A stretch of 63,835 bases of DNA, counting the filler, from Lenisia limosa (lineage: Eukaryota; Protista; Breviatea): assembly GCA_001655205.1 (NCBI GenBank). It is 11 parts of 11 records of this genome, joined end to end, with 100 filler letters (N's around TTAATTAATTAA, not from the genome) between each part and the next. Parts side by side here need not be neighbours in the genome. Positions count along the whole stretch, not along the records: positions 52,859 to 60,219 come from LPNZ01001347.1; 10 more parts are not named here. One strand, written 5' to 3'. How positions within the stretch are numbered: the first letter of the stretch is position 1; the number at the start of each line of letters is the position of its first letter. Both the position numbers and the translations under genes were made by a program. Under the pieces are notes generated by a model. That model saw only the letters and a program-made list of their open reading frames with translations. It did not search any database and was not told where the DNA came from. Positions 51,461 to 60,329 of the stretch are shown in pieces.

Positions 51461-54400
51461 GTAAGCAAGATTAAGTCTTCTCCTTTGCAGTTGTTGAATT
51501 ATGCATTGATATCACGCATTGGTGTTTGATTGTTCAACTTCTCGGAGAGTTACTACTTCGTCTTTTTGAACTTCCATTTATTTCGAATTATTCCTTTTGC
51601 TCTATCCTCAAAAAATTTAAGACTGCAATTTACGACTGAGGTAACAATTTACAACCCAAATAAAAGCATGACGATTCACGAGCAAGACAATTTCATGGCT
51701 TATCAAAAGTACAGGCACAAGAAGAAGGAATAGTGCGATTACGTTATTGGGTCTGTATGACTGGAAATATTCAAGACGCCTGCTTCAACACACCTCAATA
51801 AAGCGAAGGACCTTGGGGCCGGTAAGCTCATCCCGAGTAAACATTAGTCTTGAGATTGTAGCCTTTAAAAAATGAATCGAAACCCACAAAAGTACAAATC
51901 ATGATTTGAATATAATGCCATACCACTCTTGCTGTCCCCTGGTCCTCAGCAATGCTCAGAAAGTTTTGCAGCGCCTCAATTGCTTTGAGGCAATGCGGGT
52001 TCTTGTTGTACTAAGTGGATTAGGGTTTTTTTTTTGAATTTTGGCTTTTTTTCGATTTTTGAAAAACCCAATTTTAAAAAATCGGTTTTTCAGTGTAATT
52101 GTCAATTAGATAAGTTTTAGTAGCGTTTGCTCTGGTCAACTCGTGACGAGTGTCTGCTTCCTGACATCAAAACAAGTCGTTCGGCTTCTTTTTCCATACC
52201 ATAAAGATGGCCTGCGCTGTGAGTATAGAAGATTGACATACAATAAGGGTCTCAGAAAAATCGGGAACTTCCTTGTGGTACAACATTGAAAACATATATG
52301 ATATTGAAGGTGGGAAAACTGAATAAGCTGAACGGGCTTTTATGTGATTGTCGCCGTTGTCACCATAACCGTTAAAAATGTGCAGTTTCAGTAGGGGGGT
52401 TATTCATTTTATTATGACGATCAAAGGCTTGGGCCAACGTGGATATTAGGGAATGTATATTTTACATGGGGGAGCCTTTGCTGCAGAGGCTAAGTCCTCC
52501 ACAGTGGTGTCAACCCATATCAAGAATTTCCAAGGGAAGAGTCTGGGCTCCTTGCAACAAACAATAATAACCCAAAAAATTTCCTGAGAAAACAATGCTT
52601 CCCTCGTATAGTTTCAAATGATACCAATACGATGAAGCCCGTACACTAAAATACTGCACAATGATCCCACAATGAAAATTGTATTCTTTTTTTTTGTTTC
52701 ATCCATTTTTTGTTGACCATTATCTTGTTCTTTTTTTATCATGCTAACCATTTTGCTGNNNNNNNNNNNNNNNNNNNNNNNNNNNNNNNNNNNNNNNNNN
52801 NNTTAATTAATTAANNNNNNNNNNNNNNNNNNNNNNNNNNNNNNNNNNNNNNNNNNNNTCATCCGCTGAACACCCCAAGAAGAAAGCCAAAAAGGATAAG
52901 GTATGTCCAGATGTGGTTGTATCCAATAATACACAGTATCTACTTTTCCATAATGATATTGTGTAACATGACTGACATCAACCCACGAACTGTACACACA
53001 AACAAAAACAAACACACACAAATCCAACATTACCATCACACCACCAAAACCATACACACAAATACACCCATACACACACTAATCACATCACCATTGGGGG
53101 CATCAACTCTCAGCTTATCATAAACTTCAAAACCACCCATTATTTTAAGTTTATTTGATTATGTTGCATTCTTAGCAGGTAACCTTTAATTGATAAAAAA
53201 AAGGACTAACTTGTTTGAAGAGCAAAGTGTCCATAATTTGTACATTCCAGGTTTTCATTATCTACCCTGTTAAGGATGCAAATACCCCAAAATGGAGCAA
53301 GTTCAGTTTCTAAGGTACTGTGCGCCAAACACCTTCGTTCCGGAAGCCCGCAATTGCTGTATCCAGGTATTTTTATATATTGGTGGATATATCGTTTTGT
53401 TTGACGTATATATTTTTTGTCCTAAATTTGAAGAAGAATGTAATTGTAGACATCTCTCAACAACTGGTCGATATCTCGACAGCACCAACCTTTCTCCACG
53501 AATTGTATCCGCAGCCCTAGCAGGCAAATNNNNNNNNNNNNNNNNNNNNNNNNNNNNNNNNNNNNNNNNNNNNNNNNNNNNNNNNNNNNNNNNNNNNNNN
53601 NNNNNNNNNATAAAATTACGTTCTTGTATCATGATGTGATAGGTAAGAGGATATGATATTATATTTGCTTCCGCAGCCTTCCTTTGGTTTGTTTATTGTC
53701 ATACTTCAGGTCCACATTTACGTCAAGGGCAAGCCGCTGTTCTTTTCGCTGAGATACCGTACCGTCTTCTTTCTTCATTTCGTTTTGATCGACCCCAAAA
53801 TCCGTGAAGCCTTTGAGAGGGCACATGTCATTCAACTGGCGTCCGTACAACACCAGATAAGAAAGCCAAAACCAAAAAGAGGTATGTCCATTTGTGGTGT
53901 CACTATGCTCTCACCATCATCCCATGGGATAACATGACATATGATTATATTTTTAATGTTATCATCACATTGTGGTAACTGCTTCTTTTTACCCCTTTTT
54001 TTCAACTTGCACTCATCATTGCTCATCAATACAACTGTCCGATTTGAGCTCTGACGCAATACCTAAAAGAGGCAGTCATTCATTGACGATTTGGTTAAAC
54101 CTCTCGGCTCCAAATGAGACCCGTCGACAACTGTATTCGCAATTGAGTAGCGCCCAAGCTGTGACTCAGCACGTCAGCTGCACCAAGGCTACGGTGAAGT
54201 GCCGCTATGCTGGTGGTCCATAGACTGGATTTATTAGTAGTTAGATGTGTTTATTTTATGGCTTTTTATGTATATCTCGTTTGTCCGTTGAGTTAGAAAT
54301 GAACCAATGTTCCTTGTCATATAAAATTTATGATAGATTCGCTTTTTTTCTCTTCAGTTGTGAGGTGAAGTGCCATGCACACACTTCTTGAAGTCGCCTG

Positions 54401-55754
54401 GTTTACAATAAAAATAGAACCAGAAACAACATTCAATAACATGAATGATTCAAAACAACACCAAAACACAATAATAACGCATCAACACAATCATAACACA
54501 TCAGAAACTATGCAGAATAACATCCTTGGTTTAATGGGGCAGAGATCCATTCGCTTCAGGTACGCGAGCCCTGTTCCATCGCACGGTCTGGATTAGAGTT
54601 CTCAGTCGGTACTGGGTGGCGCAAGGGTTCAAGAGGCGATGCCTCAAACAAAACAGAGATCAATTTAAAGATTACATTACCTACAAAATGTATTTTCCGA
54701 TGTGGCCAGGTGCAGCATCCTGTTCATGCCCTCCAGGTTCGAAATATAGTGGGGTGTATCAACTAAGATGGTGAATGAAACTCTTATCGTGGGAGAATCA
54801 AAACTACAAGTGGGACCCCTATTAAAACTGGATCCAGTGGAACAACCAAAAAATGACAACCAAAAAAAGGGGGGGGGGACTCTGGTTGTGTAGAAATGAG
54901 AACTGCTTCACTTTGATAATCACGCTTTCATATTCAGAACAACGGCAGTCTTTCCTTGGCAACCGTCATCATGAACTTGAAACCTCTAATTCAGTTGGCT
55001 TATATTTTGTGAAAATTGAAGGTCAATACGTTCTTTGATGAAATTGATAAAAAAGGGAATGTGAGTAAAATATAGCAAGAAGCAAGAAAGTGAAGGTTGC
55101 CACACTTCTTGCATGCGGCTGTTTCAATTGGGGTTTAGACTTCAAAACAGAAGTGATGCAAGGTGAGCGTATTTTATATTCCATTACCCACTATAAATAT
55201 TTATTTGTGAAAATCATAAGTTTTGTGGTTCGATTTTATCTCAAACATGTAGAATTGCACCTTTCCCTCAATGATGCGGTATTTGAAGTTGAGAAGAAGG
55301 CAAGTGCAACGAGATCTGCAAGGAAGAAGAGAGAAGAAGTTAAGGAGAGAAGACTTGTAGTTAGAATAATGAAGAGAAAGGCAAGTGTTGAAAGGATGAA
55401 GAAAAGCAAGGGTACTGATACAAGCAAATTATTGAGGAAGAAGAGGTCATTGTGCACGTCATGCCCCTGTTGATAAGTGAATTATGGTATTTTCTCTGGT
55501 GACTATTTATGAATATTGTTTCTGGAATGTATTATACTATGTGATGAGGGTGAAATTCAATCACTAATCAATCCAAAAGAGTAAAGAAAAAAAGTAGATG
55601 TATTAACGAAATCTTACTCAAACCGAGCACGAACAGCATCAATAAGAGGAGCTGGCAGAGGAGATCTTGACAACAGCCCGAGGGCTTCACTCAGGGTGCG
55701 ATAGATCTCCTTGTCAATCCAGTCGTGGTCAGGGTCGACAAGGTCAGTATGAAT

Positions 55755-55830
55755 ACATAAGTTCGTACTTTGATGAGAAAAATAAGTTCGTACTGTGATG
55801 TAAAATAAGTTCATACTCCGATGTAATTCC
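55755..55830. repeat. Degenerate tandem repeat, ~24-bp unit, 3 copies
   Basis: ATAAGTTCGTACT.TGATG.. repeated. The TAAGTTCGTAC word also occurs at ~25228 next to a family E hairpin. Confidence 0.7.
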
Positions 55831-56408
55831 GTGAACTATAATCAAACGTAAGCGGGAGAATGGGACTTAGTGTTGTGTGAGTTCGCACATCTGTTCTGTC
55901 CGGATATTTCTTACTCGGTACATTTTATCATCAAGTTATTAACGCTCCAGCTCCGTGAAAGGAAGGGGAAAAAAAAAGAAGTCCATTTTCTGTACCAGGA
56001 TCTCTACCCCGCCCCATCTTTCTCATCAAGCTTGATCATTGGATGAAAGTCGACTTTGAGGCGTCACATTAGGGCACCTCATTGTAGAGCAGGGTTCTAC
56101 GGCTCTACTTGTGAACAGCAGAAGATAAGAACAAATCCTAAAGGGGCAAGTTTCGATATAAAGGCAAACAAGGGCAGTCACAAGCTTTATACAGCTTACA
56201 CACAACAAACACAATGCAGCTGTTAATCAAATGAGCAAATGACACTGCCTTCACTAAAAACATTTACAGCTATAGGCCCTCCCTTGTTGCTCTTTACTTC
56301 TGTCTAACACTCTAACAGCAATAATCGTTCCTGTGAAGACGCCCCCAGGCTTAACTTAATACACAACCCCATGATAGTGAGAAGCAGAGAGTCAGTTTTA
56401 CATAGGTT

Positions 56409-57036
56409 TTATAGTTCTATTGTAAGTTTAGAACTTAAATCATGCACATCAACAACTTCACAAAACTGAAGAAAAGAAACACAACCATTGTCACATTTTG
56501 AAAACATTAGAGATTTGTCAACAATTTGTTGAAGTTGAACATCTGAGAGATTGGATCCAACTACATTAAATGAAGAAAAAAACCCATTAGTTTTAGCACT
56601 TGAAAAAGCTCCCCATTAGAAATTAAACCGTCACCATCAACATCAAATATTGCAAATGCAACAAAATTAAGCTCCAAAGAAAACATTTCAGCTTTTCTTC
56701 AATTGATGAAGAAGAAAAAACAGACAATGACTTTAAAAACTCGCCAAATTGAATTTCATTATCATTATTACTATCAAAAACTGAAAACACTCTTGAAAGT
56801 AAGGGGTTGAGTTGGAGTTCAGGGAGCAACAATTACAATCGTAACAAAAAAAACAGTGTTGAGTTCATTCACCGTAAGTGTATTTGATCCATCAATGTCT
56901 AATTGCTGAAATCTTTTGAATAGCTTTTTGACTTCTTTTGATGAAACAAAATGAAAAAAAACCAAAAACATTGTGTTTCAACTTGTATTAGTGATTCATC
57001 AATACCACAAGAAGTTTTAGATATTTCCTGCCCCAT
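56409..57036 (-). CDS. CNB1: Calcineurin B (EF-hand regulatory subunit) with 4 tiny introns, three of them GT-TG
   Basis: Spliced MGQEISK...TQFSSKEVKKLFKRFQQLDIDGSNTLTVNELNT(L)[90 protein letters not shown]...IEL* is colinear with human PPP3R1 ([45 protein letters not shown]). Confidence 0.95.
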
Positions 57037-57564
57037 TATATGACACAAATTCTGCACAAACTTCAAATAAAAAAACTTTGAACAGAAGTTGTTTTTCCCG
57101 GGGCGCCCCGGGTCTCAAAATAACACCCGGGCAACTTTCAAAGCCATTTTGTAGAGATTGGCTCATTCAAGCGGCAGTAAGACATTCCATTGGTCATTGA
57201 TAAAAATTAAGAAAAGAAGAGCTTTAGGGAGGGTATTGTGGATACTAGTGGCTCTTTCAAAAGCCGAGATTGCTGCAAGGTTTACGTCGCTTCCCGCCCC
57301 TTTGCTTATAATAGTAATAGGTTTCGTTGAAAAAGTTGTATTTCACTAATATTCTGAAGATCACACAAATAGTTTGTCACTCATCATATTTTACCATTAC
57401 ATCGTATAATTATGGGACTTTATCACCCTCAACGTACTCAATTGTTTCCTTGATTAACTTTTTGACTAGAATGAGTGCTATAACATGAGCGTCACTGCAA
57501 GCTTATAATAACACCGAGTTTGGCTTCGAAAATATCTCCCTTACTATTGATATTGTAGCTGTTG

Positions 57565-58190
57565 ACGGACACATTCGCTACAGTGTTGTGGACGAATTAT
57601 TTCCTGCATTCTCAAGCTTTGTCACCCTTGCTGCCTTTATCAAACACCATCTCAAAATTGATGTCAAAATTTTGGAATGGTCAAGTATCTTCCTAACGGA
57701 AAAACAGACCGAACTTGTTTGTTACACAGTTTGTTTTANNNNNNNNNNNNNNNNNNNNNNNNNNNNNNNNNNNNNNNNNNNNNNNNNNNNNNNNNNNNNN
57801 NNNNNNNNNNNNNNNNNNNNNNNNNNNNNNNNNNNNNNNNAGGACATTTCTAAGAGTTAAGCCTGTCTATGAAATCGACCCACTCACTTTAAAACTCTTT
57901 ACGGACTATGTAAATATGGAGTACGATCGGTTGGTGTTCCTTTTCCCTAACTCTCCAGCGAAAGCCATTCAGTAGCGATTTCTCGCAACGAATGAATGAT
58001 TACGCAATCAAAATGGCAGAAAAAATCCTGGGTATGCTGGAATTTGTTGTAACATATACCTATTTGTAGAAGGGGAAGTTGCTGAGCTGTTTGCTGTCTC
58101 AAAAAAGTCACTGTTTATGCCAACAACCGATGAGCTGAAGAAAAATCCTGATTTGTTGTCGCAGAGAATGAAGCTGGAGCTTGGAGGTGA
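57565..58190 (+). CDS. Hypothetical spliced gene fragment
   Basis: Exon-like frames VDGHIRYSVVDELFPAFSSFVTLAAFIKHHLKIDVKILEW, RTFLRVKPVYEIDPLTLKLFTDYVNMEYDRL|RKPFSSDFSQRMNDYAIKMAEKIL|EGEVAELFAVSKK..., joined by phase-compatible GT-AG introns. Confidence 0.35.
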
Positions 58191-60329
58191 GACTACTTCA
58201 TTTAATTGTGGCATACTTGTTCCAAAAATCTCATCAAGCCAGTTGTCAAAGACCGAGTGAAGGCAACAATGCCATATTTTGTCAAAAAAAATGGAAGTTC
58301 AGAAGAATCAAGCCGTTGATGACTGGGATGATGTTTCATAGTTCGTTTTTCTTACCTGTATACGTGAGCGCAAACACCAGCGGCTGTCCCTGAAGTCGTA
58401 CGCCTTCAGCATCTACCTGAAGGGTCAAGGAGTGGCCAGCAATGTTGGTGCATATTTCATTTTTTGGGACTATTAAGGTGATTGATTCTCTGTCCAAAAC
58501 CCGGATGACAATGACGTCTGGACAAATCAACAAGGTCCACACCTGCATTGCTCGTCTGAAGACCGGAGCTGACGTGATGTCACACTGAAGGACTACCACA
58601 TGGCGATATGTTACGATAATCTTAGTATTGCAGGCGTTTGAGGGGCAATTTATGACACATGAGTACATATCATATCATATGCATATTACATATTATAATA
58701 TATTATAGCATCTGATATATTATACATATCATATGTATGTGTATATGATATGTACTACATTAGATGATCATACATATCATATAGAGTATGTATGTAAAAT
58801 AACTCTTCTGTGATATGATACATATAACTACTGATAATATCAGCTGTCGAATCTTACTCTCTAGAAAAATTTCACTCACATGTTTCTGTTTGCGATTGAT
58901 GAGATCATTGACCTTGATCACCTAAAGGATGATGATGGTGGTGAGGTGACTGAAGGGGCTGCGGTAGACATCGTCTTCCCCAGTGATCAGGAGTTTGTTT
59001 TGTTTTGTCATTTTATTCACATCTAGATACCAAGAATATCATTATCGCCACATCGAGATGCTTCGAGACGGTTTACTTGAACTGGAAGGCTTTAGAGCAT
59101 ATGCTCGTTCGCGTTGTTTGTGGGTAGACTTTATTACCAATCAGACATTTTATTGTTATACTCTTATCAGATTCCAAAGAGTAATTGTTCAGCTTACTAC
59201 TTCAACACCCAAAGCTCAAAACAAACCCTCATTTGCAACCAAGCTCTCATTCATGAGAATGAAGGTACAATTAACGGTATGCTGTTTTCATTCTTTGGAT
59301 AAAACCACATCTTTCCCAGGCTCAATCAAGCTCAACCAGTTGATCAAATTCATTGCGGAATCAACAAGCGTCATTTGTTCATCATTTTATTCACAAGAAA
59401 CACCCAAAATTGAACACAAAGATGACCACACAGATAATAAGGTTTGGAGTTCCTTATGTTAAATCTATTGTGAATTGCTTGTGGCACGACGAATACCACC
59501 ATACCCCCCTCTCCTCTCTTCTGTTCAAGCAAGAAAGAAGTCCTAGATTTTTATAAATAACTGTACATGAATAGTTTTTTAACCAAGAACGACCCATTAT
59601 CACCGCTGAGCGCCGTCCGGTTACTTCCCGTTTTGGAAGGCTCAGGAAGCCAAGCCGATGGATCACCAGAAGATGACCCTTTTTTCTTGTAAATTATTAT
59701 ACTTCCTCAAAAATCAATAGCATTTTTTTGTTATAAAAGGGACAAAAGGTGATACAGAAGTAAAGAAGAAACAAAAAGGCATATATTTTTAGTGTGAAAA
59801 AATAACTTGGATATTTAGAGCCAGGTTCAGAGAATTAGAGCAGGACCCCCGTATGAGAAAAAAAATTGAAAAAATGAACCTGGCAGAAAAATTCAGACTT
59901 TCTGAACTCAACTATCAAACCACTTCAGACTCCCATCTTATTATCATTTTGTACATCTTTAAGAGCTTAACAGTAAGTAATTTCGGCGGCATAGCCTAAA
60001 TAAAAAGAAGCACATTTTGAAAACATTAATTAATCTCAAGGTTTGTAATTAATCCCAAGGTTTATGCGGAACAGCATATATTCCTAAATGAAGTCATTAA
60101 TTCAAAACAATTTATTTTTCTTCTTTTTTATTATTTCTTTACTTTTTTACAGCCCAAAATTGTTTTTTTGCAAAAACTCCAGATTTCAAATCATGAAATA
60201 TATTAAAACAGTAGTTACANNNNNNNNNNNNNNNNNNNNNNNNNNNNNNNNNNNNNNNNNNNNTTAATTAATTAANNNNNNNNNNNNNNNNNNNNNNNNN
60301 NNNNNNNNNNNNNNNNNNNATAGTATATA

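What the first reader, a model, noticed from the sequence alone, without database searches (positions are those of the whole stretch)
56409..57036. Calcineurin B gene with three tiny GT-TG introns: apparent non-AG 3' splice sites
Seen: the EF-hand protein is colinear with known calcineurin B only if four short inserts are removed. On the minus strand these are i1 56947-56969 GTTTTTGGTTTTTTTTCATTTTG (23 nt), i2 56830-56854 GTTTTTTTTGTTACGATTGTAATTG (25 nt, or 28 nt to the next TG), i3 56662-56684 GTTTTCTTTGGAGCTTAATTTTG (23 nt) and i4 56561-56583 GTTTTTTTCTTCATTTAATGTAG (23 nt). None is a multiple of 3, so retention frameshifts the gene. i1 and i2 contain no AG at all, and the only AG in i3 gives the wrong product. 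Removing them restores TQ-F-SSKEVKKLFKRF, NELNT-LPEL and [12 protein letters not shown]. Known: tiny spliceosomal introns occur in chlorarachniophyte nucleomorphs, heterotrich ciliates and Paramecium but end in AG, and TG acceptors are otherwise rare exceptions. Inference: this organism routinely splices ~23-nt introns with a relaxed acceptor (NG).
Basis: partly seen in the sequence, partly recalled or inferred. Interest (0 to 1): 0.92.

Follow-up and report, generated by a model that had tools for sequence, protein, structure and literature searches.

The report
Tiny introns ending TG, not AG
A complete calcineurin B gene is interrupted by four 23-28 nt introns, three of which end in TG instead of the near-universal AG; two of these sit at intron positions shared across eukaryotes, so this organism's splicing machinery probably accepts TG, although no spliced RNA could be inspected directly.

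Summary
On the minus strand, 57036-56409, lies a complete calcineurin B (CnB) gene of 176-177 aa. It is readable only if four T-rich inserts of 23, 25 or 28, 23 and 23 nt are removed. All four start GTTTT; three end TG and one ends AG.

Two TG inserts (i1, i3) sit at exactly the position and phase of canonical introns in 8 of 9 and 9 of 9 CnB genes from animals, chytrid fungi, Amoebozoa and Naegleria. They are therefore old spliceosomal intron positions whose AG is now TG. The junction codons restore residues conserved in 75-96% of 174 relatives. A separate assembly of DNA reads shows the same letters.

Canonical GT-AG alternatives exist only for i1 (38 nt) and i3 (50 nt), and both delete conserved residues. 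i2 has none under 91 nt.

A poly-A RNA run holds words from the coding span only, but no junction-spanning contig could be displayed. Use of TG in mRNA is therefore inferred, not seen. "Routine" genome-wide NG usage is untested: this is one gene, and only TG and AG occur.

TG acceptors have precedents (human alternative sites; small AT-rich Micromonas introns), so this is a new variant of a known kind.

The parts
56970..57036 (-). CnB exon 1 (67 nt): ATG at 57036-57034, MGQEISK...VETQ plus the first base of the Phe23 codon
   Evidence: The MGxxxS N-terminus aligns with CnB relatives.
56947..56969 (-). Intron i1, 23 nt, GT..TG, phase 1 inside the Phe23 codon (T|TT). It contains no AG.
   Evidence: Same column and phase as canonical introns in 8 of 9 surveyed CnB genes. 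Phe at this column in 75% of 174 relatives.
56855..56946 (-). CnB exon 2 (92 nt): SSKEVKKLFKRFQQLDIDGSNTLTVNELNT, EF-hand 1
   Evidence: Pfam EF-hand matches; alignments A1 and A3.
56827..56854 (-). Intron i2, phase 0, GT..TG. 28 nt is preferred. A 25-nt version ending at 56830 also ends TG, giving a tandem TTG|TTG. It contains no AG, and the nearest AG is 35-38 nt downstream.
   Evidence: The extra Leu of the 25-nt version is a gap in 174 of 174 relatives. The position is not shared with the 9 surveyed genes.
56685..56826 (-). CnB exon 3: [47 protein letters not shown] plus the first base of Phe, EF-hand 2
   Evidence: PDB phmmer best hit CnB, 1.3e-11; Pfam EF-hand.
56662..56684 (-). Intron i3, 23 nt, GT..TG, phase 1 inside the Phe of KLK-F-AF. 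Its single internal AG gives a 13-nt intron and a stop.
   Evidence: Same column and phase as canonical introns in 9 of 9 surveyed CnB genes. Many unrelated genomic gene calls read '...KL[KRQ]C...' into an intron at this site. Phe in 96% of relatives.
56584..56661 (-). CnB exon 4 (78 nt): [25 protein letters not shown], EF-hand 3
   Evidence: Pfam EF-hand_1 at 27.6 bits, above the cut-off.
56561..56583 (-). Intron i4, 23 nt, canonical GT..AG, phase 1 inside the Val of LM-V-GSN
   Evidence: Val in 96% of relatives. The position is not shared with the 9 surveyed genes.
56409..56560 (-). CnB exon 5 (152 nt, including the TAA stop at 56409-56411): [15 protein letters not shown]..., with a degenerate EF-hand 4
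   Evidence: PDB phmmer best hit CnB, 1.1e-8, aligned to the C-terminus. No Pfam EF-hand hit.

Best explanation
This is a functional, expressed calcineurin B gene with four ultra-short, U-rich spliceosomal (U2-type) introns. Three of them use TG as their only 3' splice site.

Proposed mechanism: in introns this short, the 3' cut site is set mainly by distance, not by recognition of an AG. The three 23-nt introns share G1-T-T-T-T5, an A at position 18 inside [A/C]AT (a likely branch adenosine) and a terminal G at position 23. A single rule picks the correct junction in all four introns, taking i2 as 28 nt: use the first G lying at least 5 nt downstream of that A. Only the last G would be needed for exon ligation, and -2 may be A or U.

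Shown: the gene structure, the DNA letters, the homology of the i1 and i3 positions to canonical introns elsewhere, the conservation of the restored residues, and RNA signal confined to the coding span.

Inferred: that the mRNA is joined at these TG sites, the branch A, and the ruler rule, which rests on four introns.
For: (1) Removing the four inserts gives a stop-free 534-nt ORF, while all unspliced frames are broken.
(2) The product is CnB along its whole length: 58% identity to P0172 over 177 aa, E 8e-67; PDB best hits are CnB.
(3) i1 and i3 lie at the same alignment column and phase 1 as canonical GT/GC-AG introns in Sycon, Ixodes, four chytrids (three of them for i1), Dictyostelium, Pelomyxa and Naegleria. 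Those exon structures were rebuilt so that they translate exactly to the annotated proteins.
(4) Junction codons restore F23, F102 and V128, conserved in 75%, 96% and 96% of 174 relatives. The residues just before i3 (K99, L100) are 100% and 93% conserved.
(5) The inserts are 63% T against 36% T in the exons, and all start GTTTT. i1 and i3 have the same 23-nt length as the canonical i4.
(6) A DNA contig of run X1 matches with 0 differences.
(7) The poly-A RNA run X2 holds 25 of 62 sampled words of the coding span and 0 of 26 in the flanks (P = 2.4e-5). No colinear, unspliced X2 contig lay on the gene at 90% likeness or better. A fully spliced contig would score 85% if gaps count as differences.
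(8) Precedents that spliceosomes can ligate at TG: PMC2374985 (human) and PMC3879977 (Micromonas).
Against: No RNA read or contig across any junction was seen. The X2 contigs that hold the gene's words were not displayed, and a filter rather than splicing could be the reason. X2 holds 40% of words, below the 64% expected for a complete spliced transcript.

EF-hand 4 is degenerate, with a one-residue deletion and lost acidic ligands, which could signal relaxed constraint.

In-frame canonical alternatives exist for i1 and i3.

Published splice-site logos for the known tiny-intron animals show 'GTa...AG' (PMC13644364), unlike GTTTT...TG here. Those logos derive from canonical-only annotation, and the organism here is not identified.

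The ruler rule was fitted to four introns after the fact.
Confidence: 0.7

Rival explanations
1. The gene is a decaying or non-functional copy. The acceptors were AG and have mutated, the inserts are no longer removed correctly, and no full-length CnB is made.
For: EF-hand 4 is degenerate and gives no Pfam hit. No junction-spanning RNA was seen. The gene lies in a short single-copy island between high-copy repeats.
Against: There is no stop or frameshift in 534 coding nt, and long stretches are identical to relatives, for example [13 protein letters not shown]. Random decay would have to hit the same -2 position with the same A-to-T change in three introns while sparing all exons. The RNA words are confined to the coding span.
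Confidence: 0.12
2. Splicing is canonical but uses other boundaries. i1 would be a 38-nt GT-AG intron (56969-56932) and i3 a 50-nt GT-AG intron (56721-56672), giving a shorter CnB.
For: Both alternatives are in frame and stop-free. The 50-nt one also starts GTTTT.
Against: They delete in-frame residues that match relatives: S24 49%, E27 70%, a hydrophobic residue at 28, K99 100%, L100 93%, F102 96%. They also move the introns off the positions shared by 8-9 of 9 genes. i2 has no canonical solution under 91 nt, and the shortest ones delete EF-hand 2, so a non-AG site is still needed.
Confidence: 0.07
3. The inserts are removed or bypassed by a non-spliceosomal route: IRE1/XBP1-type cleavage of 23-26 nt introns, germline-limited DNA elimination as in ciliates, or translational bypass.
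For: The 23-28 nt size resembles XBP1-type introns and short ciliate eliminated sequences (own knowledge).
Against: There are no CNGCNGN loops, and i1 has a single C. The boundaries are not TA. All four inserts start GT, i4 is plain GT-AG, and i1 and i3 are homologous in position and phase to spliceosomal introns elsewhere. The inserts are present in the DNA run at normal depth.
Confidence: 0.03
4. The TG is a sequence or assembly error, or a rare allele, and the true letter at -2 is A.
For: None found. X1 may be the same sample as the assembly, and contigs drop rare variants (tool notes).
Against: The X1 contig covers the whole gene at depth 34.8 with 0 other letters, and no variant is listed between 56409 and 57036. 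The same error would have to occur three times.
Confidence: 0.02

Closest known systems
Small AT-rich 'BOC1' introns of Micromonas with TG or CG acceptors, and its IE-B/IE-D introner elements with GT-TG ends (PMC3879977)
   Same: They are short, AT-rich, GT-starting introns in which TG serves as the acceptor of the intron rather than as a side product of an AG site. Most are EST-validated. They have no discernible branch motif.
   Different: Micromonas is a green alga with a GC-rich genome, where these introns are confined to one low-GC chromosome region and only 34 of them are non-canonical. Here the introns are 23-28 nt, in a roughly 38% GC repeat-rich genome, and 3 of 4 in a single conserved gene are TG, two at pan-eukaryotic intron positions.
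TG alternative 3' splice sites of human U2-dependent introns (PMC2374985)
   Same: U2-type introns ligated at TG, including TTGTTG tandems like the one at i2. TG is the preferred non-AG acceptor.
   Different: In human, TG is never the sole acceptor and lies within 28 nt of an AG that defines the intron. Here TG is the only workable site. i2 has no AG within 35 nt, and the nearby AGs of i1 (+12 and +15 nt) and i3 (-10 nt) give a stop or delete conserved residues.
Ultra-short introns of dicyemids and myxobolid myxozoans (PMC13644364, PMC6543705, PMC6736024, PMC2222250)
   Same: Median 22-27 nt, narrow length range, reduced splice signals, weakly conserved A residues near the 3' end. The piece's GC, gaps, repeats and gene density fit the Dicyema japonicum genome statistics.
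   Different: The published logos are 'GTa' and 'AG'. They come from TopHat/AUGUSTUS/BRAKER models, which as far as I know admit essentially only canonical sites, so non-AG introns could not have been seen. This protein's long N-terminus looks non-animal, so the organism may be neither.
Tiny introns of mikrocytids (16-17 nt), heterotrich ciliates (15-16 nt) and chlorarachniophyte nucleomorphs (18-21 nt) (PMC10245619)
   Same: Extremely short, length-constrained spliceosomal introns, which suggests a physical ruler in the spliceosome.
   Different: The length classes differ, and I found no non-AG acceptors described for these groups.
U12-type (minor) introns, whose 3' dinucleotide is variable and whose 3' site is set by distance from the branch site (own knowledge, not checked here)
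   Same: The concept of a distance-defined 3' site with a relaxed terminal dinucleotide.
   Different: The defining U12 5' motif (A/G)TATCCTT and the branch motif TCCTTAAC are absent. All four introns start GTTTT.

Membership tests
U2-type spliceosomal intron | 5' terminal GT (or GC) | tested here: met
   All four inserts start GT, specifically GTTTT.
U2-type spliceosomal intron | 3' terminal AG | tested here: not met
   i1, i2 and i3 end TG; only i4 ends AG.
U2-type spliceosomal intron | Positional and phase homology with accepted introns of orthologous genes | tested here: met
   i1 matches 8 of 9 genes and i3 matches 9 of 9, same column and phase 1. i2 and i4 are not shared.
U2-type spliceosomal intron | Branch adenosine upstream of the 3' site | tested here: inconclusive
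   A at position 18 within [A/C]AT in the three 23-nt introns, and AAT at positions 21-23 of i2. This is a motif only; no lariat data.
U2-type spliceosomal intron | Precise removal from mature mRNA | tested here: inconclusive
   The RNA run holds words of the coding span only and no unspliced contig was laid, but no junction was displayed. The spliced product is absent from the protein collection.
U12-type intron | 5' (A/G)TATCCTT and branch TCCTTAAC motifs | tested here: not met
   Read directly from the sequence: neither motif is present.
Human-type alternative TG acceptor (PMC2374985) | TG used only beside a functional AG acceptor within 28 nt | tested here: not met
   For i2 the nearest AG is 35-38 nt away. 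For i1 and i3 the nearby AGs give a stop or delete conserved residues.
IRE1/XBP1-type unconventional intron | Twin stem-loops with CNGCNGN cleavage loops | tested here: not met
   No such motif is present; the inserts are 63% T and 6% C.
Calcineurin B (PPP3R) protein family | About 170-180 aa, N-terminal MGxxxS, four EF-hands, colinear with CnB and best hits to CnB | tested here: met
   EF-hands 1-3 have intact loops; EF-hand 4 is degenerate.

The most novel reading that the evidence does not exclude
In this genome the ~23-nt introns are spliced by a ruler mechanism that needs only a terminal G, with T or A at -2. TG acceptors would then be common genome-wide, even at introns inherited from the earliest eukaryotes. 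Published annotations of tiny-intron parasites rest on tools that, as far as I know, admit essentially only canonical sites. They would have missed such introns, which breaks gene models and inflates apparent gene loss.
Probability: 0.35. Interest if true: 0.8.

Novelty: new variant of a known kind. Interest (0 to 1): 0.6.

Why it matters
The 3' AG is among the most fixed signals of U2-type splicing. In human, TG works only next to a real AG. A conserved gene in which TG is the sole acceptor of three introns, two of them at positions that carry canonical GT/GC-AG introns in every gene surveyed that has one there, would show that an ultra-short intron can dispense with the A at -2. It would also give a natural system for asking how the second catalytic step chooses its site, by distance or by sequence.

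There is a practical side too. The genome annotations of tiny-intron parasites were built with aligners and gene finders that, as far as I know, allow essentially only canonical ends. If TG acceptors are common there, genes like this one are mis-modelled or counted as lost.

Tried and rejected
(1) Direct view of junctions. Read laying with the DNA run X1 and the RNA run X2 at 90% likeness laid no X2 contig on the gene, although the index says X2 holds 40% of the gene's words. In hindsight a lower likeness setting might have let a multiply gapped contig through.

(2) Fetching the spliced transcript through the protein collection. I ran a profile of six CnB relatives plus the exon pieces, the exon 3 ORF alone, and a profile weighted towards the window's exons. 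The organism's own product was never returned; the best match was 58% identical.

(3) The representative search with exon 3 was dominated by long multi-EF-hand proteins and did not return the organism's own protein.

(4) An alignment of one relative plus the exon pieces (A2) stacked the EF-hands on each other and was discarded.

(5) A junction pattern allowing a 0-30 nt gap, scanned against metagenome contigs, gave 0 matches.

(7) Other genes in the piece that could add introns: none by Pfam and no Rfam family.

(8) Organism identity. Dicyema-like by GC, gaps, repeats and gene density (PMC6736024). Myxobolid considered (PMC13644364). Mikrocytid and other ascetosporeans rejected on intron length, GC and genome size (PMC10245619, PMC11069148). 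The long N-terminus of the protein argues against an animal. Left open.

(9) Ogino 2010, the cDNA-versus-genome comparison of dicyemid introns, is not held in the library.

Structure prediction and exact-sequence look-ups of the spliced product were therefore left out.

Full report
WHAT IS THERE

Four inserts interrupt an otherwise perfect reading frame: 56969-56947 (23 nt), 56854-56830 (25 nt), 56684-56662 (23 nt) and 56583-56561 (23 nt). Removing them gives 534 nt with no stop, encoding 177 aa from MGQEIS to TIEL. Each of the three unspliced frames has many stops. All four inserts begin GTTTT. The first three end TG and the fourth ends AG. The inserts are 63% T, against 36% T in the exons.

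THE PROTEIN

- Exon 3 and exon 5, searched alone against solved structures, hit calcineurin B first (1.3e-11 and 1.1e-8).
- Exons 2-4 carry EF-hand matches.
- The spliced product is 58% identical over its whole length to a protist CnB (P0172, E 8e-67), and 52-53% identical to sponge and tick CnB.
- The N-terminal MGxxxS and the C-terminal end are both in place, so the gene model is complete.
- EF-hand 4 is degenerate: one residue shorter, with acidic ligands lost.

ARE THE INSERTS INTRONS?

I rebuilt the exon structure of nine annotated CnB genes, accepting only chains of GT/GC-AG introns that translate exactly to the annotated protein. The genes come from Sycon, Ixodes, Powellomyces, Geranomyces, Chytridium, Blyttiomyces, Dictyostelium, Pelomyxa and Naegleria.
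- An intron in phase 1 inside the Phe codon just before the first EF-hand helix is present in 8 of the 9. This is exactly i1.
- An intron in phase 1 inside the Phe of KL-x-F-AF is present in all 9. This is exactly i3.
- Many unrelated genomic gene calls among the representatives read '...KLKC' or '...KLRC' straight into an intron at the i3 site, where T|GT reads as Cys.
- i2 and i4 are not shared with these nine genes.

So two of the three TG inserts sit at intron positions shared across animals, fungi, Amoebozoa and Discoba. In every surveyed gene that has an intron there, my reconstruction, which accepted only GT/GC-AG ends, closed exactly.

ARE THE JUNCTIONS RIGHT?

In an alignment with 174 full-length relatives:
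- The residues recreated by the split codons are conserved: F23 in 75%, F102 in 96%, V128 in 96%.
- The two residues before i3 (K99, L100) are conserved in 100% and 93%.
- The extra Leu produced by the 25-nt version of i2 is a gap in all 174. i2 is therefore best read as 28 nt (56854-56827), ending in the second TTG of a TTGTTG tandem.

An exhaustive scan of alternative boundaries shows:
- i2 has no canonical solution shorter than 91 nt, and the shortest ones delete EF-hand 2.
- i1 has an in-frame 38-nt GT-AG alternative that deletes SSKEV.
- i3 has an in-frame 50-nt GT-AG alternative that replaces [13 protein letters not shown] by LNFV.

For i1 and i3 it rests on the conservation of the residues that the canonical alternatives would remove and on intron-position homology. 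Both point to the TG junctions.

DNA AND RNA

DNA. A DNA-type run (X1) holds 98-100% of the sampled words. One of its contigs, 1382 nt at depth 34.8, covers 55783-57164 with no difference and no gap. The T at -2 is therefore not an assembly slip, although X1 may be the very sample that was assembled.

RNA. A poly-A RNA run of the same study (X2) holds 25 of the 62 sampled words within the coding span and none of the 26 in the flanks (P = 2.4e-5). That argues for a transcript rather than DNA carry-over. A fully spliced transcript can hold at most 64% of the words; 40% was observed.

No X2 contig was laid on the gene at 90% likeness or better. An unspliced contig would have been laid. A fully spliced one would score 85% if gaps count as differences. 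This fits splicing, but it is indirect, and a filter could also explain it. I could not display a single junction. Three searches of the protein collection did not return the organism's own product, and a junction pattern found nothing in metagenome contigs.

MECHANISM

The three 23-nt introns share G1TTTT5, A18-T19 within [A/C]AT, and G23. i2 has AAT at positions 21-23 and G at 25 and 28. One rule picks all four junctions: the first G at least 5 nt after that A. It skips the G two nt after the A in i4 and the G three nt after it in i2, which gives 28 nt, in agreement with the protein alignment.

I therefore propose U2-type splicing in which the 3' site is measured from the branch or the 5' end, and only the terminal G is needed. 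From established structural work (own knowledge), the last G of the intron pairs with the first G of the intron, and the A at -2 contacts the branch adenosine during exon ligation. Tolerance of U at -2 would be the derived feature. The rule is fitted to four cases and is an inference.

COMPARISON WITH WHAT IS KNOWN

- Introns under 30 nt are documented in dicyemids and myxobolid myxozoans (PMC13644364, PMC6543705, PMC2222250), and in mikrocytids, heterotrich ciliates and nucleomorphs (PMC10245619).
- The piece's 38% GC, N gaps, flanking high-copy repeats and lone small gene in 7.3 kb fit the Dicyema japonicum genome statistics (PMC6736024). The protein's long N-terminus looks non-animal. I leave the organism open.
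- The published 'GTa...AG' logos come from TopHat/AUGUSTUS/BRAKER models, so they may not be able to reveal non-AG ends.
- In human, TG is a proven acceptor, but only as an alternative within 28 nt of an AG and never as the sole site (PMC2374985).
- In Micromonas, 34 small AT-rich introns have TG or CG acceptors, mostly EST-validated, and two introner families use GT-TG (PMC3879977). This is the closest precedent.
- I found no report of non-AG acceptors in dicyemids, myxozoans or other tiny-intron lineages.

VERDICT

The gene almost certainly needs TG acceptors, and two of them replace ancient canonical sites. The mRNA junctions have not been seen, and nothing shows that the organism does this routinely or accepts any N at -2. 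I rate it a new variant of a known kind, with interest 0.6.

Noticed in passing
window 55905-57116 versus its flanks 55602-55904 and 57117-58400: The CnB gene sits in a single-copy island of about 1.2 kb (X1 word depth 34.8). Both flanks are sequences present at 4-14 times that depth, with many variant contigs and internal joints, so they are high-copy repeat families. The RNA run has contigs on some of these repeats (55646-55831 and 57181-57356).
   Followed up: partly
window 57097-57112: A perfect 16-nt GC-rich palindrome (CCCGGGGCGCCCCGGG) lies about 60-75 nt upstream of the ATG, close to where the high-copy repeat begins. DNA contigs diverge at 57118 into a related CCCGGGG-containing sequence. 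It may be the end of a mobile element.
   Followed up: no
window 55757-55828: Three head-to-tail copies of a 23-25 nt unit (ATAAGTTCGTACT...), 71-88% alike, inside a repeat that is covered by an RNA contig.
   Followed up: no
window 56827-56832 (minus strand): The i2 acceptor is a TTG|TTG tandem, the TG counterpart of NAGNAG acceptors. Both sites are in frame, so two isoforms differing by one Leu are possible. The same TTGTTG motif appears among the human TG acceptors listed in PMC2374985.
   Followed up: partly
window 56460-56500 (minus strand), exon 5: EF-hand 4 of the CnB is degenerate: SKCD-NGCVSFLQ where relatives have D-x-D-G-D-G-x-I-S-F-x-E. It is one residue shorter and lacks the acidic ligands, so the fourth calcium site is probably lost.
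   Followed up: no
window 56970-57036 (minus strand), exon 1: There are 22 residues before the conserved Phe, as in protist and fungal CnB (177-178 aa). Sponge and tick CnB have 15 or fewer. The gene also lacks two intron positions that both the sponge and tick genes have (columns 84 and 166). Both points question an animal origin of the genome.
   Followed up: partly
window 55090-55473 (+): A 127-aa Lys/Glu-rich ORF with no Pfam match. Its 3' part (55400-55504) is covered by an RNA contig at depth 9.7 and by DNA at about twice single-copy depth.
   Followed up: no
window 53530-53609 and 57739-57840: Two runs of N (80 and 102 nt) are scaffold gaps inside the piece. ORFs listed across them are artefacts.
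   Followed up: yes
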